Assembly: GCF_003918875.1 (NCBI RefSeq)
Contig: NW_025765942.1
Location: 1 to 64,000 of the forward strand
Direction of reading: 5' to 3'
DNA length: 64,000 nt
Source: Haliotis rubra
Lineage: Eukaryota
The position numbers and the translations under genes were made by a program. Positions 34,095 through 61,152 of the stretch are shown one piece after another. Each line of letters starts with the position of its first letter. Position 1 is the first letter of the stretch. Under the pieces are notes generated by a model. It saw only the letters and a list, made by a program, of their open reading frames with translations. It did not search any database and was not told the origin of the DNA.

Positions 34095-34977
34095 ATGGCA
34101 GGTCGAAGATGGAACAAGTTGGCAACCTTCAGAGGAATATGTCACAGCATGAAGAAGAAGCTGTGCTGCTGTGGTTGGCCAGGATATCAGGTAGGTGGCT
34201 CCAACTGCCCTTCAGATATACTTAATCTACCATGGTCCTACTTGCTTCCTCCCTTCCTTTCACCCTACCCTCCTTTCTCCTTAAGTCCTCTATCACATTA
34301 GCATCCTCAAATTGAGTTGACACATTCATAATATTCATAGTAAAGAGTTGACCTATGATGGCATGTGAAGTTACCAATCAAATTCCATTCACACTTGGAA
34401 TTCACATTCTCAGGGGAAAGAAATCTATGTTATTGATGACTTCATAATTTTAAGACTCACGCATACTATCACAGTGCGGGCGGTGGGGTAGCCTAGAATA
34501 AATTTCTCATAGAAGGTGAACGTTAGAATATATTCCGCATAGTAGATGAATAAGAATATGATATATTTGGCGTAAATTACACAATTCTTTGTACTCGTCG
34601 TGTCATATGTTGAATTTGCTGTTTTCCCCTGTCCTCAGTTGGTGCCACCAGACGAGGACTGGAAGGACGAGGACCGCCTGACAGAAGATGAAAGAAGGTC
34701 GTGTGTGTCAGAGAGGACCCTGTTCCTGGTGTCTCAACACGTGGGCGGGGGTTTCCAGATGCTGGGTCTGAGACTGGGGCTTCCCTACGTTAGTGTGGAG
34801 AGGTTCACGCTGTCACAGTCATCGCCTCAGATGCAGATATTCGCCATGCTGAACACGTGGAGACAGCGGAAGGGAAGACGGGCAACTGTTGAAGTCCTGG
34901 TTCAAGCCCTATCTGACAGCATGTCGGTCTGCACGGTGGACATGCCTCATGTCTACAGGGTGATCCGTGAAATGTAA
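34095..34977 (+). CDS. Death-domain-only protein copy 1 (exons 34095-34190, 34639-34977), open frame
   Basis: MAGRRWNKLATFRGICHSMKKKLCCCGWPGYQ|LVPPDEDW...LFLVSQHVGGGFQMLGLRLGLPYVSVERF..QMQIFAMLNTWRQRKGRRATVEVLVQAL: death-fold pattern. CAG|GTAGGT..cctcag| is phase 0. Start codon uncertain. Confidence 0.8.
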
Positions 34978-35240
34978 CAATGTGTGTCACCATATACATC
35001 CACGTACAGCAAGCAGCTCTCTGGGACTTATGACATACTTAAATATATTTCAAGTTCACTGCAGTTTTGCGAGATGTTGTTGAGAAGTATCAGTAATCTG
35101 CCACTATTTTCATTGTAATATTTCAGTAATGTCGATGCGTCCCTCCCATGATGTCTTGGACTCCGTGTAAACGTGGGATATTTTATGAAGGTGTTGACCT
35201 AATAAAGTCTTACAATGTTCTGTTTTGTGTCTATTCTTTA

Positions 35241-35418
35241 AGTGAGTGAATGAGTGAGTGAGTGTGTATGCTTTTAGGTCGCATTTAGCAATATTTGAGC
35301 AATATCACGGTGGAGGACACCAGAAACAGGCTTCACATATTGTACCCATGTAGGGAATCGAACCCGGGTCTTTGGCATGACGAGCCAACACTTTAACCAC
35401 GAGGCTACCCCATCGCCC
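35241..35418 (-). mobile_element. tRNA-derived SINE family B (paralogous copies at ~48380-48535, 53050-53210, 57747-57915; fragment at 42672-42750)
   Basis: GGGAATCGAACCCGGG (B box, reverse) and (GAGT)n tail. Confidence 0.85.
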
Positions 35419-36623
35419 TTTCTCTTTAAGAATGAATAAAGCATGTGGGTGTAACGTACTGTTTAAGACAGTGAATAAAGTTTAGGTTTAACCCGTACAA
35501 GCAGATATGCAGTCACATGCCGCATGTACACTGGTTGGTCCGTGAAATGTAACATTACTAGAGACAGACACTACGACATATGACTCCCTGAATATATAAT
35601 TACATGTATGAACGACAAGTTTCCTTAATGTTGATCGCATTTGTATGTTACTTTGGTGAGAAAGATTACCCAAATCATTACTTTCTTCGATTGTAAACAG
35701 TCTTTATCTATCCCTGCTATGATTCAAAACCTTTACACTTTGATTTTTTTATGTATCCACTGGATGTTTGTGAATATATTTCCTAATAAAAACTTAAGAC
35801 TACTGCCAGATGCACGTCTTAACTTCATTTTGTATAACCGTTGTGGAGAATGATCCGTGCAAGGTAACGCAGTTAAAGACAGTGAATAAGTGCGGGTTCA
35901 CGCCCTGTCTGATAGCATGGCTGTGTTCACTGTAGACTGGCCTCGTAATACATACAGGTATATCAGATACACAGGGCTACTGAGAATCTGGATACCTAGA
36001 ACATGATGATGTAGTGAATATGTCGCGTCATACTTCACAAGCCCGTTATAATTACTCCATTGTTGTCATTTAACTGTTACAAAGGAGCTTACTGTTTTTT
36101 AATTTGTTCTAGTTAAGTAAGAGTCAACATTTTTCTTGTTATACATATCTTTTAGTCACTCTACTTTGAAATCTCGAAATTCGGATAACAACTCTGTTAT
36201 GAATGTTTCATTTTGAAGCAGCAGTCAGTGGAGCTTTGGCAGTCATTACAGACACTTTGGTTGTGGACAGATGTACACGCATAGATTTCTGCTCCCCTCC
36301 TCCCTTTCCCTTCTTCCAACACACACGCCCGAATATAGAAAGTGCACGTACACACACACACACACACGCACGTACACACACACGCGCGCGCACGTCCGCA
36401 CACGCACAACGCAGAGACTGGGACGCCATGTTATATGTCCCATTTTACGTATCATGAACACTGTGCATTGCTATTTGGCGGAATGGGAAGGTATCCGTGA
36501 AATGTAACACTCGTAATCAGATTGCTGTTTCTAAATGGTAAGCGCCAGTTGACATTGTGACTGTATTTAAAACTGTTCGTCATGGTGACCATAATGACAC
36601 ACACTTGTCTATAAAGCTATCTG

Positions 36624-36850
36624 CCCGTGAAGATCCGGATTATAATTGATCTTCATTAACACATGCTCGTCCTAAAAGGCGACTAACGGGATCGGGTGGT
36701 GAGGCTCGCTGACTGGGTTGACCCATGCCATCGGTTCCCAACTTCGTAGATCGATGCTCATGCTGCTGATCACTGGATTGTCTGGTACTGACTGAATTAT
36801 GGCTGGAATATTGCAATATTGCTGAGTGCGGCGTAAAACTTAACTCACTC
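36624..36850 (+). mobile_element. SINE family A (paralogous copies at ~49702-49941 and 54383-54623; partial at 40731-40875 and 59090-59230)
   Basis: CCCGTGAAGATCCGG...GGCGACTAACGGGATCGGGTGG...AATATTGCTGAGTGCGGCGTAAAAC..ACTCACTC. Confidence 0.85.
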
Positions 36851-38780
36851 TCTGTGTGAACCTGCTGAAGCTCGATAAGGGAGCGAAGCCAAACCTCCGT
36901 TAAAGCGCAGCATTGTAATAAGCTTTAGATAGTCGCCGTTCCACTCGTGTGTTCTTTTGTTTGCAAATAATAATTATGCTGTCGACACAGACGATTGCTC
37001 AGTACACTGCTTGTCTAGTTTAAAATGTATCGAAAATACGTTTTCAGTGTTAGGTGCGTTTATACAATATTTATAAGAAATAAATTAAACTAAAACAGAG
37101 AACTGACTTGTGGACATATTAATGGCGGTGACAGATTGAGCATAGCGTGAGATACTTTAGTTGAAGAAAGACAAGTTGTTTGAATTACATTCTTTACAGT
37201 TTAAACCTACTATACAAATGTTGGCATAACATAGTGCTTACTGTTGACACAGACACGTCCATAATGTGTGCATCAGAGACCATATTTATGGTGCTAGTGC
37301 ATTATGTAAGTGCATCCCATGCATTGTGTTTAGGGGTGGTGATAAACAGAAATGGTGGTGCGTTCATACGATGTCTGTCTTTGAAACGTTTGTTAACGCT
37401 TATACTTCCTATCCAAAGTGAAAGTTCAGGTTCCCGTGTATATTTAACAGTATATTACACTACCTCAAAAGCGGAACTGTTAACAAATGTAGTTTAGCGA
37501 ACTTAACCGAGCATTTCCGATTGTAATACAAGGGAGATAACACTAGGTGGAGGTATATCATTAGACTGGTTTGCCTGTCGTAGAGCACGTGCACCTTACC
37601 GCTGCTGGGACTTTGGGTCACACAACACCAAATGTTTTCCCATAGACTTCTATAGTAAAGTTGTATATTTCTTTAAATCATCCAGGCTGTCAACAGCCAT
37701 TCCATGTACATATGTGTACAGTCTGGACTTTAAACTACAGTACAAAAGCCACAAATCCCGGCTAAGTTATCGTGCTAATTTTCCCAGCACAGGAAGCTGA
37801 ACACATCAACCCCATTTCTCCACCAAATATCGCCTGCATGAAATGTCTGTACACTGAAATAAGCATAAGTCGTGGTGATAAAATGACAGCACTAAATACT
37901 TAATATTATTATAGGTTTTAATTGCTGGATGGATGTGCTTTTCAAAAACCATAAAATCTTACACTATTTCATCCAACCACAGCTCTCACATGTCTCTATC
38001 TCTTCAAATGTTTACATACGGTACTCGCTCAGGCGCATGTCCTTCCTTCATTTAGTTAATAGTGGAACCTTTAGGACAGGGTGCAGGTCTAGCTATGTCG
38101 TCTGCTGTCAACATATCCGTGAAGTCTGTTCGTGACTATATCCATTGAAACTGTTAGGGGAACGATACTGAAAACAACATTATTTTCACGGATCACCCTG
38201 TATACATGTGACCGTTACCGCATGTCTGTTTGCACGGGTTAAACCTGAACTTCAGTCACTGTCTTCCACAGTACGTGTACGTTACACACATGCTTCATTC
38301 ATTCTTAAAGAGAGACACTAAACTCAAGATGAAGAAAACATTGTAAGTCTTTAAAGCTTCATTAGGCTAACCCCTTCATAGTATATCTCATGTTTACACC
38401 TTGTCAAATGATGATCCGTGAAGCATGAGGCCATGTTTACAATTTACGGAACTGAAAGTCTCTGAATGGCTTTGACATTACTTTACATTACATGATAACA
38501 TATCTGTGACAAATACAAAAGTAGTCCCCTTTGTAGTTTTGAGTTTCTTAAGTGTGTTTGGGGATGTTCAATACGTTTAACTACAGCGTTCAGACAAAGT
38601 CTCTGCAACCCCAGAATCCGGAAAGTGTATCAATATTAGGAAAAAGGTCCACGGAACAGTCCACGGATCAGGTATAAATAGCATTACAATGTTAACGTGT
38701 TTCTAGTTTCGTATGCAAGTCATTATAACAATAGATCCGCAGATTCAAACAATCCGTTCTACCCTACATAACGTAGAGAT

Positions 38781-39727
38781 ATGGCAGAGTTTGCCAGTTT
38801 ATTTATCGTTGTGGGAGAGAGCGCACTCCGAGTCGCTGTGCTCATGGCAGGTCGAAGATGGAACAAGTTGGCAACCTTCAGAGGAATATGTCACAGCATG
38901 AAGAAGAAACTGTGCTGCTGTGCCTGGCCAGGATATCAGGTAGGTGTCTCCAACTGCCGCTCATATATACTTAATCTACCATGGTCCTACTTGCTTCCTT
39001 CCTTCCTTCCTTTCTCCCTACCCCCTTCTCTCCTTAAGTCCTCTATCTCATTAGCATCCTCAAATTGAGTTGATTCATACATAATATTCATAGTAAAGAG
39101 TTGACCTATGATGGCATGTGAAGTTACCAATCAAATTCCATTCACACTTGGAATTCAGATTCTCAGGAAAGAAATCTGTGTCATTGACGACTTCATAATT
39201 TTAAGACTCACGCATACTATCACAATGTGGGCGGTAGGGTAGCCTAGAATAGATTTCACATAGAAGGTGAACGTTAGAATATATTCCGCATAGAAGATGA
39301 ATAAGAATATGATATATTTGGTGTAAATTACACAATTCTTTGTACTCGTCGTGTCATATGTTGAAGTTACTGTTTCCGCTGTCCTCAGTTGGTGCCACCA
39401 GACGAGGACTGGGAGGACGAGGACCGCCTGACAGAAGATGAAAGAAGGTCGTGTGTGTCAGAGAGGACCCTGTTCCTGGTGTCTCAACACGTGGGCGGGG
39501 GTTTCCAGATGCTGGGTCTGAGACTGGGGCTTCCGTACGTCAGTGTGGAGAGGTGCACGCTGTCACAGTCATCGCCTCAGATGCAGATATTCGCCATGCT
39601 GAACACGTGGAGACAGCGGAAGGGAAGACGGGCAACTGTAGAAGTCCTTGTTCAAGCCCTGTCTGACAGCATGTCGGTCTGCACGGTGGACATGCCTCAT
39701 GTCTACAGGGTGATCCGTGAAATGTAA
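38781..39727 (+). CDS. Death-domain-only protein copy 2 (exons 38781-38939, 39389-39727), 165 aa, open frame
   Basis: Only copy with an upstream in-frame ATG (MAEFASLFIVVGESALRVAVL...). Canonical GT-AG intron. Confidence 0.82.
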
Positions 39728-40122
39728 CATTGTGTGTCACCATATACATCCACGCACAGCAAGCTGCTCTCTGGGACTCATGACATACTTAAATTTATTT
39801 CAAGTTCACTGCAGTTTTGCGAGATGTTGTTGAGAAGGATAACTCACCCACCACTATTTTTATTGTAATATTTCAGTAATGTCGATGTGTCCCTCCCATG
39901 ATGTCTTGGACTCCGTGTAAACGTGGGATATTTTATGAAGGTGTTGACCTAATAAAGCTCTAAAGTCTTGTTCTCTTGTGTGTCTCTCTTTAAGAGTAAA
40001 TGAAGCGTGTGGTTGTAACGTGCTGTTGAAGACCGTGAATTAAGTTCTGGTTTAACCTGTACAAACAGACATGCGGTCACAAGCAGCATGTCCGTGAAAT
40101 GTAAATATGTTTCCTAATAAAC

Positions 40123-40308
40123 GGGGCGGTGGGGTGGTGGGGTGGTGGGGGTGGGGGTAGCGTAGTGGTTAAAGCGTTCGTTCGTCACGCCGAAGACCCG
40201 GGTTCGATTCCCCACATTGGTAGAATATGTGAAGCCCATTTGTGGTGTCCCCCGCCTTGATATAGCTGGAATATTGCTAAAAGCGGCGTGAAACTAAACT
40301 CACTCACT
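40123..40308 (+). mobile_element. tRNA-derived SINE family B, full length, with an expanded G-rich 5' end
   Basis: TAGCGTAGTGG (A box), GGTTCGATTCCC (B box), (CACT)n tail. Absent at the equivalent position of the other units. Confidence 0.9.
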
Positions 40309-41099
40309 TATAAAACCTAACACTACGTCCAGATGCACCTTATCTTCATGTTTGTATAACCGTTGTGGAGAGAGGTATCCGTGCCATGTAGCGCAGTTGA
40401 AGACAGTGAATAAGTGCGTGTTCAAGCCAATTAGCATGGGATTCTGGATAACTGGAACATGATCACAGAAACCCAACCCCCTACCCTCGAACATAGAGAG
40501 CGCACGCACGCAAGCACGCACAGCGCAGACACTGGGACGCCATGTTGTATGGCCTATTTACGTATCATGAACACTGTGCATTGCTATTTGGCGGAATGGG
40601 AGGCTATCCGTGAAAAGTAGCACACGTAACCAGGAAGCTGTTTAAATCACACCAGTTTTCATTGTGACTGTGTATTAGAAACTGTTCGTCATGGTGAACA
40701 TTATGACACACTTGTCTGTCAACTGATCTGCCCGTGAAGGTCCGGGTTAGAATTGTTCTGTAGTAACCCATACTTGTCGTAAGAGGCGGCTAACAGGATC
40801 GGGTGAACAGGCTCACTGACTTGGTTGACACGTCATCGTATCCCAAATGAGTAGATCGATGCTCATGCTGTTGATTAGCGTTAAATCTCACCTCTGACTA
40901 CATCGATAATTTACATATTATAGTAAACAGCGTTAATCTCATCACTGCCTAAATCGATCCATTCGCGGTTTAGAAAAGAAAACTGAAATTACAATTTGCG
41001 GATTACAAAGCACGGACCCATTCAGTGTCAACGATACGGCGGGTGTATTTTAAATGCGAATTTACTGGCGTCATATCAGATGAATAAGCAGTCTACGAA

Positions 41100-41565
41100 A
41101 ATGTATTGGCTGTTCCAGTCACGTGATCATTTCAGTGTCAGTATAGCTAACGCCTTGAGCGCGCATCGAGCACACAAAGTGGAAGGTAACGCACCTGTTC
41201 AAATGAGTCCCGGAGTCTGATCATGAAGGTAGGTGACTTCAGGCATCGTTCCACATTGACGTTAGCGACGCGACTATCAACCTCTATGTAAAAGTTTATC
41301 GGCTTAAGGTCAATTATTGTCTTAGGACGATAGCACTGTTGATTACTTCCTTGACAGTATTTGGAAATTGAACCATGTCTGTGTGAGATAAGTACGCATG
41401 GTACTACTCTGTTAACTCTGGTTATAAATGTGTTGGTGTCTAGTTAAAAGAGTTTCTAATCAATTCTTTTCTTCGCTGCACCTCTAAGGCATGACGGGGT
41501 TCTATTTATAGATGGGAATTTCCACGCGCTTGATCAATGGGTATTTTTAACACATGGGATTTCCG
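41100..41565 (+). promoter_or_regulatory. Putative promoter or first-exon block with NF-kB-type sites (duplicated at ~59560-60025)
   Basis: ATTGG (reverse CCAAT), TCACGTGA E-box, ATGAAG|GTAGGT donor at ~41228, CTATTTATAG (MEF2-type) at 41502-41511, GGGAATTTCC at 41514-41523, GGGATTTCC at 41556-41564. Motif matches only. Confidence 0.4.
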
Positions 41566-41691
41566 GGACATGTTTGTGTTGCTACAATGAGAAGACCAGC
41601 GTTAAACATTTAAATTGGTAAGAACCTCAGCGCTGGCGTGGCATGAACCTTAAATATATACATAATAATTCCTTTAGCATGAGAGAAAGAT

Positions 41692-41931
41692 TTGGTTGGG
41701 TTGTTGTTTTACGCCGCACTCAGCAATATTCCAGCTATATGGCGGCGGGCTGTAAAGAATCGAGTCTGAACAGACAGTACAGTGATCAACAGCATGAGCA
41801 TCGATCTACGCAATTGGGATACGATGACATGTGTCAACCAAGTCAGCAAGCCTGACCACCCGATCCCGTTAGTCGCCTCTTACGACAAGCATGGGTTACT
41901 GAAGACCCATTCTAACCCGGATCGTCACGGG
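41692..41931 (-). mobile_element. SINE family A (further copies at 43943-44176 and 60150-60390)
   Basis: Reverse complement of the element at 36624-36850. Confidence 0.85.
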
Positions 41932-44900
41932 CATTAGAGAAAGAGCTGGGCAGAAGGGAAGCTATGTACTTTGGGGGAAATTAAGCTACAGGCAAGTCAG
42001 TGGAATGTTAGATCCCGTGTGTAACTCAATAGGGTAACCAAAGGTTCTGGTAATAAAACTACGATCACTTTTATGTATACCCAGACAGTATATTGTTTTG
42101 TTCATAATATCATCCACCGGTTTGCCTACTCCAGACTGGTTAAAATAAGTGAAGTATTCCTGTATGTGGCGTTGAAATCAAACAAATCAAAGTTATATGA
42201 GAAATCCGAGAAATGTAATAAATCCTACTAGATTTGACCATGCAGGTTTACATACTGTACTATTGTACAGTATTAGTAACCATGGTAACCCTCATCTAGC
42301 CTTCCTGGAAACAACTTTGTAACTATGGTCCTTGCCACCGTAACAGAATCGCAAAACGATGAAATTATTAACTGACGAAGACAGCTGCATGTGACCCAAT
42401 ACTTCAACAGTGAAAACAAGTGATTCCGGCAATGAATATTACCTACAGCAGCCATTAAACGTGTGCAAAGTGTGCTTTACAGTAGAATTATCACTTTTAA
42501 AATCATTATTGAGTTTGACTCAGGTTGTTACATTGCGAGTATGGATTGACAGTCTGGTGACTTTGAGTGCAGTAAGAAGTCGTGCGTTCATAAGTAGGTC
42601 AATGGCGGTTTTAATACTATGCCTTCTCGGATTTCTTTAACTTTCGGTTCACGTTGGTAATTCGCATACCTTGTACCCATATAGGGAATCGAACCCAGGT
42701 CTTCAGCGTGACGAACGAACGCCTTAACCACTAGGCTACCCAACCGCCCCTAAACGGTTGTATTACAAGGGAGACATCAACGGTCCGCTCGTCGCTGCAC
42801 TACAGCTGCTGGTGGACTGGTGTAGTTCCGAATCCCTCGTGTCAAAAGGCAGTCTGACAACTTCATGCCCCAACACACAATATTGTAATACATTCCACAC
42901 ACCTCGCTGACATATAACTGGTATACATTTCATAGCCCCAACAAGGAAATCCGAACTTGTGAATGATACTATAAGATTACTATTACCGAAGACTAATAGG
43001 TCTGTGCATTTACAGCTACCTCAAAACTAAACTGATATCTTTAGCAAACTTGACCGAGCACTTCCGATTGTCATGCAAGGGAGATAACAATAGATGGAGG
43101 CATATTATAAGACTGGTCTGTCTGCCGTAGAGCGCCTGCGCCTTACTGCTGCTGGGACTTTAAGGACAGGGTACCAGTTAAGCTATGTCGTCTGCGTGCT
43201 GTCACTCTATCCGTGAAATTTTTCGGGAACGATACTGTTGATACCATTTTCTATGAAAGGGGCGAACATTTTTTCCGGTAAGATAAATATTACGTCAGCC
43301 AGTATCTTGAGGATATAACTGAATAGACGCCAGGGCGGGTATATATTCATAGACGTCTTATTTATCAGCCATAGACTTAAAGAAAATATACCATGGATGA
43401 TTCACAACATGATTCAGGCTGCACACGATCTTGTTATTTGTTAGCAGTGTGGACAGGCGAGTATTAATTTATATATCAGTGCATTAAAAGCTGTGTCAGA
43501 TTTAAGATCGTTGTTGTTGTCGTTTAGAGCCTCGGTTTATTTGAAGGCGTAGGGTATCGAAAATGGAGCTGTTTATCTGGATAAATGAGACCTGTGTGTT
43601 CAATACTTCGAATTCACCAACGCTTTCCTATCAATACTGCTGTCTGTAACCCTAAAGGGTAAACTCCATAAGAAGATGAATCCATCACGAACCATCATGA
43701 TGACATCATCGTATATATTTCATTCTAGTTTCATTTAAATAAAATGTCCTTTCCGATGTGTCTCCTGCTGGAAAAAGGGAGAGATTAATTTCTACCAAAT
43801 ATTTATTTGTGTAGAGGACAACACTGGAAACTGATTGTAAAGAAATTCGCACTCGGCAAGGTGTCAGTGTATTTAGAATATGTTGCATCACCTAGGTCTG
43901 ATAAACATAGTATAAGGTCGCAACTGATATGGGAAACATATCAGTGAGTGAGTTTAGTTTTGCCCCGCAATATTCCAGCAATATGACAAACAGTCTGTAA
44001 ATAATGGAATCTGCACCAGACAATCCAGTGATCAACAGCATGAGCATCGATCTGCACAACTGGGATACGATGAAATGTGTCAACCAAGTCAGCGAGCCTG
44101 GCCATCCGATTCCGTCAGTCGCCTCCTACGCTAAGCATGGGTTGCTGAAAATCGATTCTAATCCGGCTCTTCACATGTGATACGCCAGGAAACAAGTGTT
44201 AAGTACCATGTACACAGAGTCAAACTGTCTTTCTCTGGCAAACCAATTTAAGTCGGATTCATATAGCGATGATAATCTGCTGGCTGGAATGATATATAAA
44301 GAACCAATTCAATTCCATCAATTTTGGAGACAAAACCAAATACCGAAAATATTGAATTCTCTGTAATACTCAAAACATGTATATCACTATTCTGTGTTAT
44401 ATTATATGAACAATATTCAGACAAGGAATGACAAATGAATATTCACAAGTTCACGGTTTGGATAATGATCTCGTTTGAAGGGGGTCTGTGAATTACGATG
44501 GAAGGGATTTGGTTTGTTGTTTTAGTTAATATATCTAAAACATACATAACTACATATATATATATATATATAACATCGATTGGAAAGCGTGCAGGGTCAA
44601 TAGCAAATGGTATCTTTCAATTCATGAAGTATTCTTCACAGTTTTCGCTCTTATGCTTAATACTTTTTTTTAAAAAAGAAATTGAATTATTACATAGGTT
44701 TTGATTGATATGGCTGTACATAAATATCTGGTATTTCATAATCGGTTGATTTAATTGGCAATCCAGATTGTTAATGGCTGTATCTTAAAGTATTAAAGTA
44801 TAAAGTTAAAGTATTGTAAAATTATTGTCCTCCTGAGAGGTTAAGTTCCAAAGCTATAAAGGTCAATTTCGCTTTACCAAACATTTAAACGTAGTATATT

Positions 44901-44993
44901 CGTTGTTTTAACTAACAGCTAAAACTCGGTACAATCGCCTCTGGCTGAAGGGATGGGGTAAGTCCAGCTGGGGTCTATGCAGGTAGCAAAACC

Positions 44994-46722: not shown

Positions 46723-47452
46723 ACTCAGCCCGTTTTTAATCTTGTATTGTCCTGATTCATATCAGATTTTAAAGATAGATGCAAGTTTAATTTAATTCTT
46801 GATACTGTGATATTCTAGTTGGTTTTACTGTCCTACAGTTTTGTATTTATCATAAATGTATAACTGGTTTTAGTCACGATATGGCTGAAATACTGCTGAT
46901 GTGACTCTAAACTCTTACTCACTCACTCTCTCATGTGCAGGTAGGACTTGGTGATCTGGTCCAACTGGCTTACTTTAGTGTAGAGACGGATATCAGTCAT
47001 GAAGTGATCCGCATCAGATCATTTCAAATGATGATCTGTGAAGTATAGGGACATGTTTACAATTTACGGAACTGAAAGTCTCTGAATGGTTTTGACATTA
47101 CATTACATTACATGATAACATACCTGTGACAAATACAAAAGTAGTCCCCTTTGTCGTTTTGAGTGTCTTAAGAGTGTTTGGGGAAGTTCAACACGTTCAA
47201 CTACAGCGTTAAGACAAACTCTGTGCAACCCCAGAATCCGGAAAGTGTATCAATATTTGGAACAAGTTTCACGGAACAGTTCACGGATCAGTTATATATA
47301 GCATTACAATGTTAGTTTCGTATGCATGTCATTATAACAATAGATCCGCAGATTCACACATTCCGTTTTACCTTACATAACGTAGAGATATATCAGAGTT
47401 TGCCAGTTTATCTATCGTTGTGGGAGAGAGCGCACCTCGGGGCGCTGTGCTC

Positions 47453-48136
47453 ATGGCAGGTCGAAGATGGAACAAGTTGGCAACCTTCAGAGGACTATGT
47501 CACAGCATGAAGAAGAAACTGTGCTGCTGTGCCTGGCCAGGATATCAGGTAGGTGTCTCCAACTGCCGCTCATATATACTTAATCTACCATGGTCCTACT
47601 TGCTTCCTTCCTTCCTTTCTCCCTACCCTCCTCTCTCCTTAAGTCCTCTACCACATTAGCATCCTCAAATTGAGTTGATTCATTCATAATATTCATAGTA
47701 AAGAAATGATGAATATGAATATGATATATTTGGCGTAAATAACACATTTCTGTGTACTCGTCGTGTCATTGAAAATGCTGTTTTCCCCTGTCCTCAGTTG
47801 GTGCCACCAGACGAGGACTGGGAGGACGAGGACCGCCTGACAGAAGATGAAAGAAGGTCGTGTGTGTCAGAGAGGACCCTGTTCCTGGTGTCTCAACACG
47901 TGGGCGGGGGTTTCCAGATGCTGGGTCTGAGACTGGGGCTTCCGTACGTCAGTGTGGAGAGGTGCACGCTGTCACAGTCATCGCCTCAAATGCAGATATT
48001 CGTCATGCTGAACACGTGGAGACAGCGGAAGGGAAGACGGGCAACTGTTGAAGTCCTTGTTCAAGCCCTGTCTGACAGCATGTCGGTCTGCACGGTGGAC
48101 ATGCCTCATGTCTACAGGGTGATCCGTGAAATGTAA
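47453..48136 (+). CDS. Death-domain-only protein copy 3 (exons 47453-47548, 47798-48136), open frame
   Basis: Same structure; intron is ~200 bp shorter than in the other copies. Confidence 0.8.
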
Positions 48137-51100
48137 CAATGTGTGTCACCATATAGATCTACGTACAGCAAGCAGCTCTCTGGGACTCATGACATACTTA
48201 AATTTATTTCAAGTTCACTGCAGTTTTGCGAGATGTTGTTGAGAAGTATCAGTAATATTTCAGTAATGTCGATGTGTCCCTCCCATGATGTCTTGGACTC
48301 CGTGTAAACGTGGTTTATGTTATGAAGGTGTTGACCTAATAAAGTCTTACAATGTTCTGTTTTGTGTCTATTCTTTAAGTGAGAGAGTGAGTATTGTTTT
48401 AGGTCGCGTTTAGCAACACTCCAGCAATATCACGGTGGAGGACACCAGAAATGGGCTTCACATATTGTACCGATGTGGGGAATCGAACCCCGCATGACGA
48501 GCCAACACTTTAACCAAGAGGCTACCCCATCGCCCTTTCTCTTTAAGAATGAATAAAGCATATGGGTTTAACGCACTGTTGAAGACAGTGAATAAAGTTT
48601 AGGTTTAACCCGTACAAACAGACATGCAGTCACATGCCGCATGTGAACAGGTTGGTCCGTGAAATGTAACATTACTAGAGACAGACATATGACTTCCTGA
48701 ATGTATAATTACATGTATGAACGACAAGTTTCCTTAATGTTGATCGAATTTGTACGTTACTTTTGTGAGAAAGATTACCCAAATCATTACTTTCTTCGAT
48801 TGTAAACAGTGCTCATCTATCCCTGCTATGATTTAAAACCTTTACACTTTGGTTTTGTGTATCCACTGGATGTTTGTGAATATATTTCCTGATAAAACTT
48901 AAGACTACTGCCAGATGCACCTTTTCTTCATTTTTGTGTAACCGTTGTGGAGAGAATGATCCGTGCGAGGTAACGCAGTTAAGATAGTGAATAAGTGCGG
49001 GTTCACGCCCTGTCTGATAGCATGGCTGTGTTCACTGTAGACTGGCCTCATGTATACAGGTATATCAGATACACAGGGCTACTGAGAATCTGGATACCTA
49101 GAACATGATGATGTACTGAATATGGCGTCATACTTCACGACCGGTTATAATTACTCCATTGTTGTCATTCAACTGTTACAAAAGGAGCTTACAGTTGTTT
49201 TACTTTTGTAGTTCAGTAAGAGTAAACTTTCTGGTTATGCATCTTTTTTAGTCACTCTACTTTGAAATTTCGAAATGCAGATAACAACACTGACATGAAT
49301 GTTTCATTTTGAAGCAGCAGTCGTGGGCTTCTGGTAGACATAGCAGACAAAGTTGTGGACAGACACACCCACAGACTCCTCCCCCCCTCCCTTTCCCCTT
49401 TCAACATACACCCCCGAATATAGAAAGTGCACGTACGTACACACACGCACGCACACAAACGCACGCGCGCACGTCCGCACACGCACAACGCAGAGACTGG
49501 AACGCCATATTATATGTCCTATTAACGTATCATGAACACTGTGCATTGCTATTTGGCGGAATGGGAGGCTATCCGTGAAATGTAACACACGTAATCAGAT
49601 TGCTGTTTCTAAATAGCACCAGTTGACATTAATTGTGACTGTGTATTAGAAACTGTTCGTCATGGTGACCATTATGACACACTTGTCTGTAAACTTATCT
49701 GCCCGTGAAGATCCGGGTTATAATTGATCTTCATTAACACATGCTCGTCGTAAAAGGCGACTATCGGGATCGGGTGGTGAGGTTCGCTGACTGGGTTGAC
49801 CCATGTCATCGGTTCCCAATTGCACAGGTCCTTGCTCATGCTGTTGATCACTTGATTGTCTGGTACTGACTGAATTATTTGCAGACGGACGCCATATGGC
49901 TGGAATATTGCTGAGTGCAGCGTAAAACTAAACTCACTCACTCTGTGAACCTACTGAAGTTCGATAAGGGAGCGAGGCCAAACATCCGTTAAATAGCAGC
50001 ATTGTAATAAGCTTTAGAGAGTCGCCCTTACACGTGTGTTCTTTTGTTTGCAAATAATAATTATGCTGTGGACACAGACGATTGCTCAGTACACTGCTTG
50101 TCTAGTTTAAAATGTATCGAAAATACATTTTCATTGTTAGGTGCGTTTATACAATATTTATAAGAAATAAATTAAACTAAAAGAGAGAACTGGCTTGTGG
50201 ACATATTAATGGCGTTGACAGATTGAACATAGCGTGATATACTTTAATTGAACAAGGACAAGTTGTTTGAATTAAATTCTTTACAGTTTAAAACCTACTA
50301 TACAAATGTTGGCATAACATAATGCTTACTGTTTACACAGACACGCCCATAATGTGTGCATCAGAGACCATATTTATGGGGCTAGTGCGTTGTGTAAGTG
50401 CATCCCATGCATTGTGTTTAGGGGTGGTGATAAACAGAAATGGTGGTGCGTTCATACGATGTCTGTCTTTGAAACGTTTGTTAACGCTTATACTTCCTAT
50501 CCAAAGTGAAAGTTTAGGTTCCCGTGTATATTTCAGAGTATATTATACTACCTCAAAACTAAACTGTTAACAAATGCAGTTTAGCGAACTTAACCCAGCA
50601 TTTCCGATTGTAATATAAGGGAGATAACACTAGGTGCGGGTATATTTTTAGACTGGTTTGTCTGTCGTAGAGCGCACGCACCTTACCGCTGCTGGGACTT
50701 TGGGTCACACAACACCAAATGTTTTCCCATAGACTTCTATTGTAAAGTTGTATATTTCTTTAAATCATCCAGGCTGTCAACAACCATTCCATGTACATAT
50801 GTGTACAGTCTGGACTTTAAACTACAGTACAAAACCCACAAATCCCGGCTAAGTTATCGTGCTAATTTTCCCAGCACAGGAAGCTGAACACATCAACCCC
50901 ATTTCTCCACCAAATATCGCCTACATGAAAATGTCTGTACACACAATAAGCATAAGTCGTGGTGATAAAAATGACAGCACTAAATACTTAATATTATTAT
51001 AGGTTTTAATTGCTGGATGGATGTGCTTTTAAAAAACCATAAAAATCTTACACTATTTCATCCCACCACATCTGTCACATGTCTCTATCTCTTCAGATGT

Positions 51101-51913
51101 TTACATACTATACTCGCTCAGGGCGCTTGTCCTTCTCATTTAGTGTAGTGGAACCTGTAAGGACAGGGTACAGGTCTAGCTATGTCGTCTGCTGTCAACA
51201 TATCTGTGAAGTCTGTTGTGACTATATCCGTGAAACTGTTAGGGGACGATACTGTAGACAACATTATTTTCACAGACCACCCTGTATACATGTGACCGTG
51301 ACCGCATATCTGTTTGCACGGGTTAAACCCGAACTTCAGTCACTGTCTTCCACAGTACGTTACACACACATGCTTCATTCATTCTTAAAGAGAGACACTA
51401 AACTCAAGATGAAGAAAACATTGTAAGTCTTTAATGCTTCATTAGGCTAACACCTTCATAGAATATCTCATGTTTACACCTTGTCAAATGATGATCCGTG
51501 AAGCATGAGGCCATGCTTACAATTTACGGAACTGAAAGTCTCTGAATGGCTTTGACATTACATTACATTACATGATAACATACCTGTGACAAATAAAAAA
51601 GTAGTCGCCTTTGTGGTTTTGAGTTTCTTAAGTGTTTTTGGGGATGTTCAATACGTTTAACTACAGCGTTCAGACAAACTCTCTGCAACCCCAGAATCCG
51701 GAAAGTGTATCACTATTTGGAACAAGGTCCACGGATCAGTTATAAATAGCTTTACAATGTTAACGTGTTTCTAGTTTCGTATGCATGTCATTATAACAAA
51801 AGATCCGCGGATATTCAGACAATCCGTTCTACCCTACATAACGTAGAGATATATCAGAGTTTGCCAGTGTATCTATCATTGTGGGAGAGAGCGCACTTCG
51901 AGGCACTGTGCCC

Positions 51914-52789
51914 ATGGCAGGTCGAAGATGGAACAGGTTGGCAACCTTCAGAGGAATATGTCACCGCATGAAGAAGAAGCTGTGCTGCTGTGGCTGGCCA
52001 GGATATCAGGTAGGTGTCTCCAACTGCCGCTCATATATACTTAATCTACCATGGTCCTACTTGCTTCCTTCCTTCCTTTCTCCCTACTCCCCTCTCTCCT
52101 TAAGTCCTTTACCACATTAGCATCCTCAAATTGAGTTGATTCGCTCTTAATATTCATAGTAAAGAGTTGACCTATGATGGCATGTGAAGTTACCAATCAA
52201 ATTCCATTCACATTTGGAATTCAGATTCTCAGGGAAACAAATCTATGTTATTGATGACTTCATAATTTTAAGACTCACGCATACAATCACAATGCGGGCG
52301 GTGGGGTAGCCTAGAATAAATTTCTCATAGAAGGTGAACGTTTGAATATATTCCGCATAGAAGATGAATATGATATATTTGGCGTAAATTACACAATTCT
52401 TTGTACTCGTCGTGTCATATGTTGAAGATTCTGTTTTGCCCTGTCGTCAGTTGGTGCCACCAGACGAGGACTGGTAGGACGAGGACCGCCTGACAGAAGA
52501 TGAAAGAAGTTCGTGTGTGTCAGAGAGGACCCTGTTCCTGGTGTCTCAACACGTGGGCGGGTTTTTCCAGATGCTGGGTCTGAGACTGGGGCTTCCGTAC
52601 GTCAGTGTGGAGAGGTGCACGCTGTCACAGTCATCGCCTCAGATGCAGATATTCGCCATGCTGAACACGTGGAGACAGCGGAAGGGAAGACGGGCAACTG
52701 TTGAAGTCCTGGTTCAAGCCCTGTCTGACAGCATGTCGGTCTGCACGGTGGACATGCCTCATGTCTACAGGGTGATCCGTGAAATGTAA
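51914..52789 (+). pseudogene. Death-domain gene copy 4 with a premature stop (exons 51914-52009, 52451-52789)
   Basis: GAG>TAG at 52475-52477 (DEDW*), upstream of the death domain. Confidence 0.8.
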
Positions 52790-55700
52790 CAATGTGTGTC
52801 ACCATATAAATCCACGTACAGCAAGCAGCTCTCTGGGACTTATGACATACTTAAATATATTTCAAGTTCACTGCAGTTTTGCGAGATGTTGTTGAGAAGG
52901 ATAAGTCATCTGCCACTATTTTCATTGTAATATTTCGGTAATGTCGATGTGTCCCTCCCATGATGTCTTGGACTCCGTGTAAACGTGGGATATTTTATGG
53001 TGTTGACCGAATAAAGTGTTACAATGTTCTGTTTTGTGTCTATTCTTTAAGTGATCGAGTGAGTGAGTATGGTTTTAGGTCGCCTTTAGCAACATTTGAG
53101 CAATATCACGGTGGAGGACACCAGAAATGGGCTTCACATATTGTACCCATGTGGGGAATCGAGAACCGCATGAAGAGCCAACACTTTAACCACGAGGCTA
53201 CCCCATCGCCCTTTCTCTTTAAGAATGAATGAAGCAAGTGAGTGTAACGTACTGTTGAAGACAGTGAATAAAGTTTAGGTTTAACCCGTACAAGCAGATA
53301 TCCAGTCACATGGCGCACGTACACAGGTTGGTCCGTGAAATGTAACATTACTAGAGACAGACACTACGACATATGACTTCCTGAATGTACAATTACATGT
53401 ATGAACGACAAGTTTCCTTAATGTTGACCTCATTTGCTGGTTACTTTGGTGAGAAAAGATTACCCAAATCATTACTTTCTTAGATTGTAAAGAGTCTTCA
53501 TCTATCCCTGCTATGATTCAAAACATTTACACTTTGGTTTTGTGTATCCACTGGATGTTTGTGAATATATTTCCTAATAAAACTTAATACTACTGCCGGA
53601 TGCACCTTATCTTCATGTTTGTGTAACCGTTGTGGAGAGAATGATCAGAGCAAGGTAACCCAGTTAAAGACAGTGAATAAGTGCGGGTTCACGCCCTGTC
53701 TGATAGCATGGCTGTGTTCACTGTAGACTGGCCTCATGTATACAGGTATATCAGATACACAGGGCTACTGAGAATCTGGACACCTAGAACATGATGATGT
53801 ACTGAATATGGCGTCATACTTCACGACCGGTTATAATTACTCCATTGTTGTCATTCAACTGTTACAAAAGGAGCTTACAGTTGTTTTAAGTTTGTAGTTA
53901 AGTAAGAGTAAACTTTCTTGTTATGCATCTTTTTTAGTAACTCTACTTTGAAATTTCGAAATGCGGATAACAACACTGACATGAATGTTTCATTTTGAAG
54001 CAGCAGTCATGGGCTTCTGGTAGACATAGCAGACACAGTTGTGGACAGACACACACACAGACTCCTCCCCTCCCTTTCCCCCTTCAACACATACGCCCGA
54101 ATATAGAAAGTGCACGTACACACACACGCACGCACACACACGCACGCGCGCACGTCCGCACACGCACAGCGCAGAGACTGGGACGCCATGTTATATGTCC
54201 TATTTACGTATCATGAACACTGTGCATTGCTATTTGGCGGAATGGGAAGGTATCCGTGAAATGTAACACACGTAACCAGATTGCTGTTTCTAAATGGCGC
54301 CAGTTGACATTAATTGTGACTGTGTATTAGAAACGGTTCGTCATGGTGACCATTATGACACAATTGTCTCTAAACCTATCTGCCCGTGAAGATCCGGGTT
54401 AGAATTGATCTTCATTAACACATGCTCGCCGTAAAAGGCGACTATCGGGATCGGGTGGTGAGGCTTGCTGACTGGGTTGACCCATGTCATCGGTTCCCAA
54501 TTGCACAGGTCATTGCTCATGCTGTTGATCACTTGATTGTCTGGTACTGACTGAATTATTTGCAGACAGGCGGCATATGGCTGGAATATTGCTGAGTGCA
54601 GCGTAAAATTAAACTCACTCACTCTGTGAACCTACTGAAGCTCGATAAGGGAGCGAAGCCAAACCTCCGTTAAATAGCAGCATTGTAATAAGCTTTAGAG
54701 AGTCGCCGTTACACGTGTGTGTTCTTTTGTTTGCAAATAATAATTATGCTGTGGACACAGACGATTGCTCAGTACACTGCTTGTCTAGTTTAAAAATGTA
54801 TCGAAAATACATTTTCAGTGTTAGGTGCGTTTATACAATATTTATAAGAAATAAATTAAACTAAAAGAGAGAACTGACTTGTGGACATATTAATGGCGGT
54901 GACAGATTGAAGATAGCGTGAGATACTTTAATTGAACAAGGACAAGTTGTTTGAATTAAATTCTTTACAGTTTAAACCTACTATACAAATGTTGGCACAA
55001 CATAGTGCTTACTGTTGACACAGACACGCCAATAATGTGTGCATCAGAGACCATATTTATGGTGCTAGTGCATTGTGTAAGTGCATCCCATGCATTGTGT
55101 TTAGGGGTGGTGATAAACAGAAATGGTGGTGCGTTCATACGATGTCTGTCTTTGAAACGTTTGTTAACGCTTATACTTCCTATCCAAAGTGAAAGTTCAG
55201 GTTCCCGTGTATATTTAACAGTATATTATACTACCTCAAAACTAAACTGTTAACAAATGCAGTTTAGCGAACTTAACCCAGCATTTCCGATTGTAATATA
55301 AGGGAGATAACACTAGGTGGAGGTATATTTTTAGACTGGTTTGTCTGTCGTAGAGCGCACGCACCTTACCGCTGCTGGGACTTTAGGTTACACAACACCA
55401 AATGTTTTCCCATAGACTTCTATTGTAAAGTAATATATTTCTTTAAATCATCCAGGATGTCAACAGCCATTCCATGTACATATGTGTACAGTCTGGACTT
55501 TAAACTACAGTACAAAACCCACAAATCCCGGCTAACTTATCGTGCTAATTTTCCGAGCACAGGAAGCTGAACACTTCAACCCCATTTCTGCACCAAATGT
55601 CGCCTACATGAAAATATCTGTACACACAATAAGCATAAGTCGTGGTGATAAAAATGACAGCACTAAATACTTAACATTATTATAGGTTTTAATTGCTGGA

Positions 55701-56601
55701 TGGATGTGCTTTTAAAAACCATAAAAATCTTACACTATTTCATCCAACCACATCTGTCACATGTCTCTATCTCTTCAGATGTTTACATACGGTACTCGCT
55801 CTGGGCGCATGTCCTCCTCATTTAGTGTAGTGGAACCTGTAAGGACAGCGTACAGGTCTAGCTATGTCGTCTGCTGTCAACATATCCGTGAAGTCTGTTG
55901 TGACTATATCCGTGAAACTGTTAGGGAACGATACTGTAGACAACATTATTTTCACGGACCACCCTGTATACATGTGACCGTGACCACATGTCTGTTTGCA
56001 CAGGTTAAACCCGAACTTCAGTCACTGTCTTCCACAGTACGTATACGTTACACACACATGCTTCATTCATTCTTAAAGAGAGACACTAAACCCAAGATGA
56101 AGAAAACATTGTAAGTCTTTAATGCTTCATTAGGCTAACACCTTCATAGAATATCTCATGTTTACACCTTGTCAAATGATGATCCGTGAAGCATGAGGCC
56201 ATGTTTACAATTTACGGAACTGAAAGTCTCTGCATGGCTTTGACATTACATCACATTACATGATAACATACCTGTGGCAAATACAAAAGTAGTCCCCTTT
56301 GTAGTTTTGAGTGTTTTAAGTGTGTTTGGGGATGTTCAATGCGTTCAACTACAGCGTTAAGACAAACTCTCTGCAACCCAGATTCCGGAAAGTGTATCAA
56401 TATTTGGAACAAGGTCCACGGAACAGTCCACGGATCGGTTATAAATAGCATTACAAAGTTAGTTTCGTATGCATGTCATTATAACAAAAGATCCGCGGAT
56501 ATTCAAACAATCCGTTCTACCCTACATAACGTAGAGATATATCAGAGTTTGCCAGTGTATCTATCGTTGTGGGAGAGAGCGCACCTCGAGGCGCTGTGCT
56601 C

Positions 56602-57483
56602 ATGGCAGGTCGAAGATGGAACAAGTTGGCAACCTTCAGAGGAATATGTCACAGCATGAAGAAGAAGCTGTGCTGCTGTGCCTGGTCAGGGTGTCAGGTA
56701 GGTGTCTCCAACTGTCGCTCATATATACTTAATCTACCATGGTCCTACTTGCTTCCTTCCTTCCTTTCTCCCTACCCTCCTTTCTCCTTAAGTCCTCTAC
56801 CAAATTAGGATCCTCAAATTGAGTTGATTAATTCATAATATTCATAGTAAAGAGTTGACCTATGATGGCATGTGAAGTTACCAATCAAATTCCATTCACA
56901 CTTGGAATTCAGATTCTCAGGGAAAGAAATCTATGTTATTGATGACTTCATAATTTTAAGACTCACGCATACTATCACAATGCGGGCGGTGGGGTAGCCT
57001 AGAATAAATTTCTCATAGAAGGTGAACGTTAGAATATATTCCGCATAGAAGATGAATATGAATATGATATATTTGGCGTAAATTACACAATTCTTTGTAC
57101 TCGTAGTGTCATATGTTGAAGTTGCTGTTTTGCCCTGTCGTCAGTTGGTGCCACCAGACGAGGACTGGGAGGACGAGGACCGCCTGACAGAAGATGAAAG
57201 AAGGTCGTGTGTGTCAGAGAGGACCCTGTTCCTGGTGTCTCAACACGTGGGCGGGGGTTTCCAGATGCTGGGTCTGAGACTGGGGCTTCAGTACCACAGT
57301 GTGGAGAGGTGCACGCTGTCATAGTCTTCGCCTCAGATGCAGATATTCGCCATGCTGAACACGTGGAGACAGCGGAAGGGAAGACGGGCAACTGTTGAAG
57401 TCCTTGTTCAAGCCCTGTCTGACAGCATGTCGGTCTGCACGGTGGACATGCCTCATGTCTACATTTTGATCCGTGAAATGTAA
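56602..57483 (+). pseudogene. Death-domain gene copy 5 with a premature stop (exons 56602-56697, 57145-57483)
   Basis: CAG>TAG at 57322-57324, mid-domain. Confidence 0.8.
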
Positions 57484-61131: not shown

Positions 61132-61152
61132 CGCAAGTATTATAGGCATTAG

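What the first reader, a model, noticed from the sequence alone, without database searches (positions are those of the whole stretch)
34095..57483. Birth-and-death cluster of small death-domain-only genes with a polybasic tri-cysteine membrane-anchor motif
Seen: five copies of [MAGRRWNK..MKKKLCCC.WPGYQ]-[acidic linker]-[death domain]; three are open and two have independent nonsense codons. Only copy 2 has a longer, moderately hydrophobic N-terminus. Established: basic residues next to Cys clusters often signal S-palmitoylation, and death-fold-only proteins can act as adaptors or dominant-negative decoys. Inference: a copy-number-variable family of membrane-tethered modulators of MyD88/IRAK, IMD/FADD or TNFR signalling. 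I do not recognise it as a named gene.
Basis: partly seen in the sequence, partly recalled or inferred. Interest (0 to 1): 0.7.

Follow-up and report, generated by a model that had tools for sequence, protein, structure and literature searches.

The report
Abalone tandem death-domain-only gene array
This stretch of blacklip abalone DNA holds five tandem copies (three intact, two broken) of a small gene, listed in RefSeq only as "uncharacterized", that encodes a CRADD-like death domain behind a short cysteine-rich leader; it is a real abalone-specific family of probable cell-death or immune-signalling modulators with no tested function.

Summary
Five ~4.7-kb tandem units in Haliotis rubra contig QXJH01001945.1 each carry a 96-nt leader exon (MAGRR..KKKLCCC.W.GYQ) and a 339-nt death-domain (DD) exon. 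Copies 1-3 are open. Copy 4 has a TAG at 52475 and copy 5 a TAG at 57322.

Copies 1 and 2 equal RefSeq "uncharacterized" 144-aa proteins. Orthologues sit at the syntenic site in three other abalone species. The DD is under strong purifying selection (omega 0.12-0.15), and all 13 H. rubra copies examined form one clade.

- The products are small and DD-only.
- A cysteine pair in the leader is invariant across subfamilies, and some sister subfamilies carry MG...C dual-acylation-type starts. A lipid anchor is therefore plausible but untested.
- The DD is closest to CRADD/RAIDD, then ankyrin and PIDD, not to MyD88, IRAK or FADD.

New here: the only spliced RNA contigs found enter the leader exon just after its ATG, from an upstream exon. 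They also use an H. rubra-specific acceptor 23 nt upstream, which puts the cysteine leader out of frame. RefSeq starts copy 3 at a duplicated, conserved first exon at 41223.

The scan found a similar cluster before on other DNA of this genome (s1-349432, s1-349505).

The parts
29951..33533 (+). Partial, gene-less repeat unit at the head of the array. It holds unit positions 2199-2429, 3633-3966 and 3970-4688, interrupted by 2.3 kb of foreign sequence.
   Evidence: blastn of the reference unit 51364-56051 against the window
33534..38285 (+). Unit 1 with intact copy c1. Leader exon 34095-34190, intron 34191-34638, DD exon 34639-34977 (stop 34975-34977), AATAAA at 35201. It has no AG at the -23 acceptor.
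   Evidence: The two exon translations equal RefSeq XP_046566136 (P0017) end to end. RefSeq CDS range is 34095-34977.
38284..39994 (+). Truncated unit 2 with intact copy c2. Leader exon 38844-38939, DD exon 39389-39727, AATAAA at 39951. A private upstream ATG lies at 38781. The internal acceptor ..CATGGCAG|G lies at 38850|38851.
   Evidence: Equals RefSeq XP_046566138 (P0001). The RNA contig matches start at 38849.
40876..42679 (+). A 92%-identical duplicate of the array's downstream flank, inserted between c2 and c3. It carries a conserved promoter-like block and a first exon ending ATGAAG|GTAGGT (ATG 41223, donor after 41228). RefSeq uses this exon as the start of the c3 gene.
   Evidence: (gene range 41223-48136)
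44860..46835 (.). 67-bp satellite of about 29 copies, 95-98% identical, which splits the array into two sub-arrays.
47024..51360 (+). Unit 3 with intact copy c3. Leader exon 47453-47548, short intron of 249 nt, DD exon 47798-48136, AATAAA at 48338. It has no AG at the -23 acceptor.
   Evidence: The DD exon equals the C-terminus of RefSeq LOC124274810 isoforms P0009 (126 aa, starts MKKKLCCC) and P0007 (114 aa, MK plus DD).
51364..56051 (+). Unit 4 with pseudogene c4. Leader exon 51914-52009, DD exon 52451-52789 with nonsense TAG at 52475-52477, plus R>S and G>F changes. The -23 acceptor AG is present (alternative exon start 52428).
   Evidence: The part of the RefSeq annotation returned for this stretch lists no protein model.
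56052..59189 (+). Truncated unit 5 with pseudogene c5. Leader exon 56602-56697 (ends WSGCQ), DD exon 57145-57483 with nonsense TAG at 57322-57324 and five further replacements. The -23 acceptor AG is present (alternative exon start 57122).
   Evidence: (omega about 0.9-1.4 in comparisons with c4 and c5)
59366..61135 (+). Original downstream flank of the array, with the second copy of the conserved first exon (ATGAAG|GT at 59682-59689). It is syntenic with the sequence that follows the array in three other Haliotis species.

Best explanation
The region is a recently expanded, abalone-specific tandem array of a two-coding-exon gene. The conserved product is about 144 aa. It has a basic 32-residue leader (net charge +7) that contains an invariant cysteine pair or triplet just before ..W.GYQ. 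An acidic linker follows, then a single CRADD/RAIDD-type death domain, and nothing else.

Most likely mechanism: the cysteines are S-acylated, so the protein sits on a membrane. Its DD joins CRADD-type DD oligomers. Because it has no CARD, it cannot recruit a caspase. It would therefore damp or relocate the assembly, acting as a membrane-tethered, CARD-less competitor or sorting adaptor.

Copies arise by unequal crossing-over and die by nonsense mutation, as in c4 and c5.

In H. rubra, a captured upstream exon and a copy-specific acceptor 23 nt upstream also yield transcripts that lack the cysteine leader or put it out of frame.

Shown: gene structure, DD identity, purifying selection on the DD, lineage-specific expansion, pseudogenes, spliced RNA.

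Inferred: acylation, membrane location, partner and decoy role.
For: Gene structure and RefSeq identity.

DD identity:
- Pfam PF00531 scores above the gathering cut-off.
- The best solved relative is the CRADD DD (profile E 5.5e-7). It is also the Foldseek top hit, 2o71, with TM 0.77 and 27% identity.
- Profile hits of about 200 aa are mostly CARD plus DD (6 of 10).
- RefSeq names some sister proteins 'CRADD-like'.

Function retained:
- DD-exon omega is 0.12-0.15 between species at dS 0.15-0.5. It is about 1 between the two pseudogene copies.

The leader frame is the conserved ORF:
- The ATG is kept in 21 copies from 4 species.
- The four independent indels in otherwise intact copies are all multiples of three.
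- The other frame has ATG-TAA in H. rufescens and H. cracherodii.
- The 58%-identical paralogue keeps LCGCC..YQ and a phase-0 junction.

Anchor:
- The Cys pair is invariant across the whole family, with MG..C(C/W) starts in sister subfamilies.
- The AF2 model shows residues 1-43 as disordered and 45-144 as helical.

Expansion and synteny.

Expression: two RNA-type runs hold contigs with the intron removed.

Context: molluscs lack APAF-1 and PIDD, and CRADD is their only CARD-bearing caspase activator (PMC11463336).
Against: No acylation, localisation or binding data exist.

The leader shows no codon periodicity (17/19/17 changes by codon position). Its pN/pS is about 1-2.5 between H. rubra and H. 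asinina. Only the Cys core and a few residues are constrained. The KKK run is not conserved.

Both spliced RNA contigs use the -23 acceptor and start their match just after the leader ATG. The RNA in hand therefore does not encode the anchored 144-aa form. Those contigs also come from a copy that is none of the 13 examined (best 9 of 18 diagnostic sites), so expression of this window's own copies is not shown.

DD-DD specificity cannot be read from sequence. Similarity to the CRADD DD is modest (27% identity).

The AF2 model is of moderate quality (mean pLDDT 60).
Confidence: 0.55

Rival explanations
1. The proteins are soluble, non-acylated DD-only adaptors. On this reading the leader is a fast-evolving, disordered N-terminal tail, and its cysteines are not a membrane anchor. 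They might be redox, metal or disulfide sites, or have no function.
For: The leader's pN/pS is about 1 or more, and it shows no codon periodicity. The polybasic run is not conserved. One H. cracherodii copy has only two Cys. RefSeq isoforms and the RNA contigs exist that lack the Cys leader.
Against: The Cys pair is invariant in every intact family member and in the distant paralogues P0004 and P0027. Sister subfamilies have a canonical MGxxxS/T-C start, which has no obvious role other than dual acylation. The reading frame is kept by in-frame indels only.
Confidence: 0.2
2. In H. rubra most array copies are decaying passengers. On this reading they are transcribed mainly because a duplicated promoter and first exon from the neighbouring gene feeds into them, and mis-splicing gives non-productive RNAs. 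Only one or a few copies, as in the other species, carry the function.
For: Five of 13 H. rubra copies have broken DD exons. RefSeq starts c3 at the duplicated flank exon at 41223. The RNA contigs enter after the ATG and use a non-conserved acceptor. Other species manage with 2-3 copies.
Against: Intact H. rubra copies still show omega of 0.12-0.18 against each other. The frameshifts in other contigs could be long-read assembly errors. RefSeq also models the canonical junction at several loci.
Confidence: 0.15
3. One reading: modulators of MyD88/IRAK (Toll), IMD/FADD or TNFR death-receptor signalling.
For: TNFR1, TRADD and FADD DDs appear as weaker structural and sequence matches. Palmitoylation is known to control death-receptor complexes (review PMC8196677, listed). 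DD-DD specificity cannot be excluded from sequence.
Against: The top sequence, profile and fold matches are all CRADD/RAIDD, then ankyrin and PIDD. No MyD88, IRAK, Pelle or Tube DD appears among the solved-structure matches. The related architectures found are CARD plus DD and ZU5 plus multi-DD.
Confidence: 0.08
4. The two exons are the 3' end of a longer receptor or multidomain gene.
For: The RNA contigs carry 28 and 82 extra 5' letters that were not placed. An upstream exon exists for c3.
Against: That exon contributes at most Met-Lys (P0007). It is non-coding in H. rufescens, where it reads ATG-TAA. All RefSeq models in four species are 114-147 aa. An in-frame TAA lies upstream of the leader ATG (read).
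Confidence: 0.02

Closest known systems
CRADD/RAIDD (caspase-2 adaptor; PDB 2o71, 2of5)
   Same: Its death domain is the nearest solved relative by sequence profile (E 5.5e-7) and by fold (TM 0.77, 27% identity). RefSeq calls sister abalone proteins 'CRADD-like'.
   Different: There is no CARD, so the protein cannot recruit a caspase. It has a basic Cys-cluster leader instead. It is about 144 aa rather than about 200 aa, and it is tandemly expanded and abalone-specific. It is not an orthologue of CRADD.
CARD-only and PYD-only proteins of primates (COP/Pseudo-ICE, ICEBERG, INCA; POP1/2). Comparison from my own knowledge, not tested here.
   Same: They are single death-fold-domain proteins made by recent tandem duplication. 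They lack the effector half of an adaptor, are lineage-restricted, and act as competitive inhibitors of death-fold assemblies.
   Different: They use a different death-fold subfamily (CARD or PYD, not DD). They have no lipid-anchor motif. Here a decoy role is only inferred.
NRADD / p75NTR-type membrane death-domain proteins (PDB 2ib1)
   Same: It is a small protein whose main module is a DD held at a membrane. It is a weak sequence match (E 0.008-0.04).
   Different: NRADD is held by a transmembrane helix. The abalone proteins have no hydrophobic segment and would rely on S-acylation.
N-terminal S-acylation and dual-acylation motifs (GAP-43 MLCCMRR, PSD-95, Src-family SH4 MGC..). Comparison from my own knowledge.
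   Same: A cysteine cluster lies next to basic and hydrophobic residues near the N-terminus. The sister subfamily's MGNYVSCW fits the N-myristoylation consensus followed by a Cys.
   Different: In this family the Cys cluster lies 24-26 residues from the N-terminus, and there is no Gly2. No acylation has been shown.

Membership tests
Death domain superfamily (Pfam PF00531) | Sequence match to the DD profile above the curated cut-off | tested here: met
   33.5-34.9 bits against a cut-off of 22.6, E about 2e-8, for four DD exons tested (c1-c4; the c4 query starts after its stop codon)
Death domain superfamily (Pfam PF00531) | Six-helix bundle fold | tested here: met
   The AF2 model has helices at 57-66, 68-77, 95-113, 116-125 and 134-143, plus N-terminal helices, with pLDDT 70-83 in the domain. 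All top Foldseek matches are DDs, with probability 1.0. The model is of moderate quality.
CRADD/RAIDD | N-terminal CARD | tested here: not met
   No CARD hit in either exon translation. Only 32 leader residues precede the linker.
CRADD/RAIDD | C-terminal DD of CRADD type | tested here: inconclusive
   CRADD is the best PDB match, but at 27% identity. No tree with abalone CRADD was made.
PIDD / ankyrin / UNC5 (ZU5-UPA-DD) | ZU5 and UPA domains before the DD | tested here: not met
   Absent. The DDs of ankyrin-1 and PIDD are the second-best matches.
MyD88 / IRAK / Pelle / Tube | TIR or kinase domain, or a DD closest to these | tested here: not met
   No such domain. None of these DDs appears among the PDB sequence or fold matches.
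TNFR-type death receptors | Cysteine-rich ectodomain and transmembrane helix | tested here: not met
   The product is 144 aa with no hydrophobic segment (sequence) and no other Pfam domain.
S-acylated (palmitoylated) peripheral membrane proteins | Conserved cysteine(s) in a basic or hydrophobic context | tested here: met
   C25 and C26 are invariant in 12 of 12 family members, including the 58%-identical paralogue. The leader has net charge +7.
S-acylated (palmitoylated) peripheral membrane proteins | Thioester-linked fatty acid and membrane association | not testable with these tools
   This needs acyl-biotin exchange, click labelling and fractionation.

The most novel reading that the evidence does not exclude
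Abalone, which like other molluscs lack APAF-1 and PIDD and rely on CRADD as the only CARD-bearing caspase activator, may have evolved a fast-turning-over family of lipid-anchored, CARD-less CRADD-like death domains. These would gate CRADD-dependent caspase activation at membranes. In H. rubra, a captured promoter exon plus a frame-switching acceptor 23 nt upstream would toggle between anchored and unanchored isoforms.
Probability: 0.15. Interest if true: 0.7.

Novelty: new variant of a known kind. Interest (0 to 1): 0.4.

Why it matters
Death-fold-only decoys (CARD-only and PYD-only proteins) are known regulators of inflammasomes in primates. A lipid-anchored DD-only counterpart has not been described.

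In molluscs the CRADD route is thought to be the main way to activate CARD caspases. A rapidly duplicating family of CARD-less CRADD-like domains would therefore be a natural control point for apoptosis or antiviral defence in a farmed animal that suffers herpesvirus and Vibrio mortalities.

The array is also a compact example of three processes acting together on one small gene: tandem duplication, promoter capture and new splice sites. All functional statements remain predictions.

Tried and rejected
1. The alternative reading frame of the leader exon (RefSeq isoform X1, starting MEQVGNLQ..).
- Between H. rubra and H. asinina it shows 7 synonymous against 4 replacement changes.
- I rejected it as the conserved frame. 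It has ATG-TAA in H. rufescens and H. cracherodii. The -23 acceptor it needs is absent there and in c1 and c3. In c2 the segment is 22 nt, and in one H. asinina copy it is 24 nt.
- Over all 21 copies no frame shows periodicity.

2. The upstream exon as a donor inside the 3'UTR of the preceding copy (ATGAAG|GT, 20 nt before AATAAA, at 35185, 39935, 48322 and 57691).
- This is not supported. An 82-nt piece from there would have been laid on c1, but the depth table leaves no room for it.
- RefSeq places the c3 start at 41223 instead.

3. Assigning the RNA contigs to a particular copy failed. The best match is 9 of 18 diagnostic sites.

4. The look-up of P0007 to place its first exon returned nothing on record.

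5. The GATCCGAA word reported for another DD cluster (s1-349431) has 0 matches in this window.

6. I searched for the first coding exon of the giant protease-ankyrin gene after the flank, but it is not within the window.

7. The Foldseek E-values are weak (0.016 at best) because the model includes 43 disordered residues, so I relied on probability, TM-score and the sequence profile.

The spliced products were taken as the stored RefSeq proteins P0001 and P0017, which equal the two exon translations.


Full report
**What is there.** The window is the first 64 kb of Haliotis rubra contig QXJH01001945.1; window and record coordinates coincide (species also). From 29.9 to 59.2 kb it is built of a ~4.7-kb unit repeated head to tail:
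- a gene-less partial unit at 29951-33533;
- c1 at 33534-38285;
- c2, truncated at 39994;
- a foreign block and a 67-bp satellite (44860-46835);
- c3 at 47024-51360;
- c4 at 51364-56051;
- c5, truncated at 59189.

Units are 92-94% identical.

**Gene structure.** Each unit holds a 96-nt leader exon and a 339-nt exon, joined by CAG|GTAGGT ... CAG| in phase 0. The second exon passes Pfam's Death-domain (DD) threshold in all four copies tested, c1-c4. c1-c3 are open. c4 has TAG at 52475-52477, and c5 has TAG at 57322-57324. That extension comes from a single ATATAT>ATATGG change absent from 20 other copies.

**It is already annotated, without a name.** The word search with the DD exon found only Haliotis proteins. 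c1 and c2 equal RefSeq XP_046566136 and XP_046566138, both "uncharacterized" and 144 aa, end to end. In the part of the RefSeq annotation that the look-up returned for this stretch, c4 and c5 have no protein model. Further copies lie on at least two other H. rubra contigs: six or more on QXJH01001062 and three on QXJH01000998. Some of these may be haplotigs. H. asinina has 2 copies in the fetched locus, H. rufescens has 2 and H. cracherodii has 3. In all four species the array is followed by the same flank. In H. rufescens and H. cracherodii that flank lies 2.4-2.6 kb before a 3,800-aa gene, which in H. rufescens shows Peptidase_C48 and ankyrin domains. The loci are therefore orthologous.

**Selection and turnover.**
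- The DD exon is under strong purifying selection between species, with omega 0.12-0.15 at dS 0.15-0.51.
- Comparisons involving c4 and c5 give omega 0.5-1.4, as expected for pseudogenes.
- On a tree of the DD exon plus 3'UTR, all 13 H. rubra copies form one clade and the H. asinina copies another. H. rufescens and H. cracherodii share two orthologous types.
- Five of the 13 H. rubra DD exons are disrupted. Frameshifts on the other contigs could be assembly errors.

Birth-and-death evolution is a fair description. Within-species copy-number variation was not tested.

**Which frame does the leader use?** RefSeq also lists 147-aa "isoform X1" proteins at sister loci. These read the leader exon in another frame and join an acceptor 23 nt upstream. 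I therefore tested the frames.
Its ATG is present in all 21 copies from four species.
- The four independent indels in otherwise intact copies are all multiples of three; one H. rubra copy, L003_20679, has a frameshifted leader.
- The other frame reads ATG-TAA in H. rufescens and H. cracherodii.
- The 58%-identical paralogue P0004 keeps ..LCGCC..YQ and the phase-0 junction.
- The -23 AG exists only in some H. rubra copies. It is present in c4 and c5, absent in c1 and c3, and in c2 the segment is 22 nt.

The leader itself is barely constrained. Minimum changes by codon position are 17/19/17, and pN/pS is 1.1-2.5 between H. rubra and H. asinina. What is kept is the start, a basic character (net charge +7), a Cys pair and W..YQ.

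**The anchor idea.** C25 and C26 are invariant in all 12 aligned family members. The exhaustive profile search (283 hits at E 1e-3 or better) shows that the nearest relatives are further small abalone DD-only proteins.
- P0027 carries ..LICC...
- P0035 starts MGNYVSCWSGF.Y, which fits the N-myristoylation consensus (PROSITE pattern, from my own knowledge) followed by a Cys.
- P0106, from an unnamed sample, starts MGGTITCC.

Independent lipidation-type starts on homologous leaders are the best available support for a membrane anchor. It remains an inference. The KKK run is specific to H. rubra.

**Which death domain?** By single sequence, family profile and predicted fold, the nearest solved structure is the CRADD/RAIDD DD. 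The profile E-value is 5.5e-7, and the Foldseek top hit 2o71 has TM 0.77 and 27% identity. Ankyrin-1 and PIDD follow. TNFR1, TRADD and FADD are weaker, and MyD88/IRAK are absent. Six of ten profile hits of about 200 aa are CARD plus DD. Longer hits are multi-DD proteins with ZU5, FIIND-UPA or CARD domains. A published survey reports that molluscs lack APAF-1 and PIDD and have CRADD as the only CARD-bearing activator (PMC11463336). A CARD-less CRADD-like DD is thus most simply a competitor or relocator of CRADD-type assemblies. This step is inference.

**Transcripts.** No run on record as RNA holds the stretch. Two small runs of one study, guessed to be RNA, cover only exons and repeats, and they contain contigs with the intron removed.
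- Both contigs join the leader donor (38939) to the -23 acceptor.
- In both, the match begins at 38849, with 28 and 82 further 5' letters that were not placed within 33900-39800.
- This fits an acceptor ..CATGGCAG|G at 38850|38851, which would remove the leader ATG.
- The contigs come from a copy that is none of the 13 in hand. Expression of the family is therefore shown, but expression of this window's copies is not.

**The upstream exon.** RefSeq's range for the c3 gene starts at 41223. There, ATGAAG|GTAGGT ends an exon. This explains isoform P0007 (MK plus DD) and isoform P0009 (starting MKKKLCCC), and it explains the 2-nt AG overlap at 38849.

That exon lies in 40876-42679, a 92% duplicate of the array's downstream flank at 59366-61135. 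The flank has a conserved CCAAT/E-box-like block and a donor conserved in all four species. In H. rufescens the exon reads ATG-TAA, so it is non-coding there.

My reading is that the first exon of the downstream neighbour was duplicated into the array and now feeds c3. The extra exon adds at most two residues, so the "longer receptor gene" refutation is not met. Even so, three of the four RefSeq isoform types found in H. rubra (114, 126 and 147 aa) lack part or all of the leader. Only the 144-aa and 126-aa forms keep the Cys cluster.

**Verdict.** This is a real, selected, lineage-specific family. The architecture of an acylation-type leader plus a CRADD-like DD alone is not described in the papers searched. 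It is a variant of the known theme of death-fold-only modulators. The scan has already reported a similar cluster on other DNA of this genome (s1-349432 and s1-349505), and those notes agree with what I tested here. Function, acylation, partner and the dominant isoform are all open.

Noticed in passing
window 40876-42679 and 59366-61135: The array's downstream flank is duplicated at 92% identity into the middle of the array. It carries a promoter-like block (ATTGG..CACGTGA) and a first exon ending AAG|GTAGGT, both conserved in four Haliotis species. RefSeq starts the c3 gene at the duplicate (41223). This looks like promoter or first-exon capture from the neighbouring giant protease-ankyrin gene.
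   Followed up: partly
window 44860-46835: A 67-bp satellite of about 29 copies, 95-98% identical, sits between the two sub-arrays.
   Followed up: no
window 35515-35555, 35888-35944, 48632-48672, 48993-49060, 53308-53348, 53679-53746, 58013-58053, 58383-58450, 30068-30135: Each unit carries two short relics (77-88% identical) of the 3' end of the DD exon, 0.5 and 0.9 kb downstream of the real exon. Equivalent relics occur in H. asinina, H. rufescens and H. cracherodii, so they predate the species splits.
   Followed up: no
window 34109-34190 and homologues (leader exon, the frame of RefSeq isoform X1): Between H. rubra and H. asinina the alternative frame of the leader exon shows 7 synonymous against 4 replacement changes (ratio about 0.2). 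The conserved frame shows 1-2 synonymous against 9-10 replacement changes. The numbers are small and the effect disappears over all copies, so it remains unexplained.
   Followed up: partly
window 34351-34554 (intron of c1; the same segment is absent from c3): A ~200-nt repeat-like insert lies in the intron. c3 lacks it, one DNA contig skips it, and all three RNA-type runs cover its 5' part even where the gene itself is not covered. It is probably an expressed dispersed repeat.
   Followed up: no
window 35185-35206 and homologues: In H. rubra the 3'UTR has ATGAAG|GT 20 nt before the conserved AATAAA. The GT is not conserved in other species. I considered it as a read-through donor and found no support for that.
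   Followed up: yes
window 30812-31201: A 129-codon ORF lies in the 2.3-kb foreign insert of the partial unit. It was not searched and is possibly part of a mobile element.
   Followed up: no
L007 10001-10929 and about 15847-16700 (H. rubra contig QXJH01000112): The 136-aa paralogue P0004 is itself duplicated 5.8 kb downstream, with the same MPVNSQG start and DD exon. Only one copy is listed as a gene.
   Followed up: no
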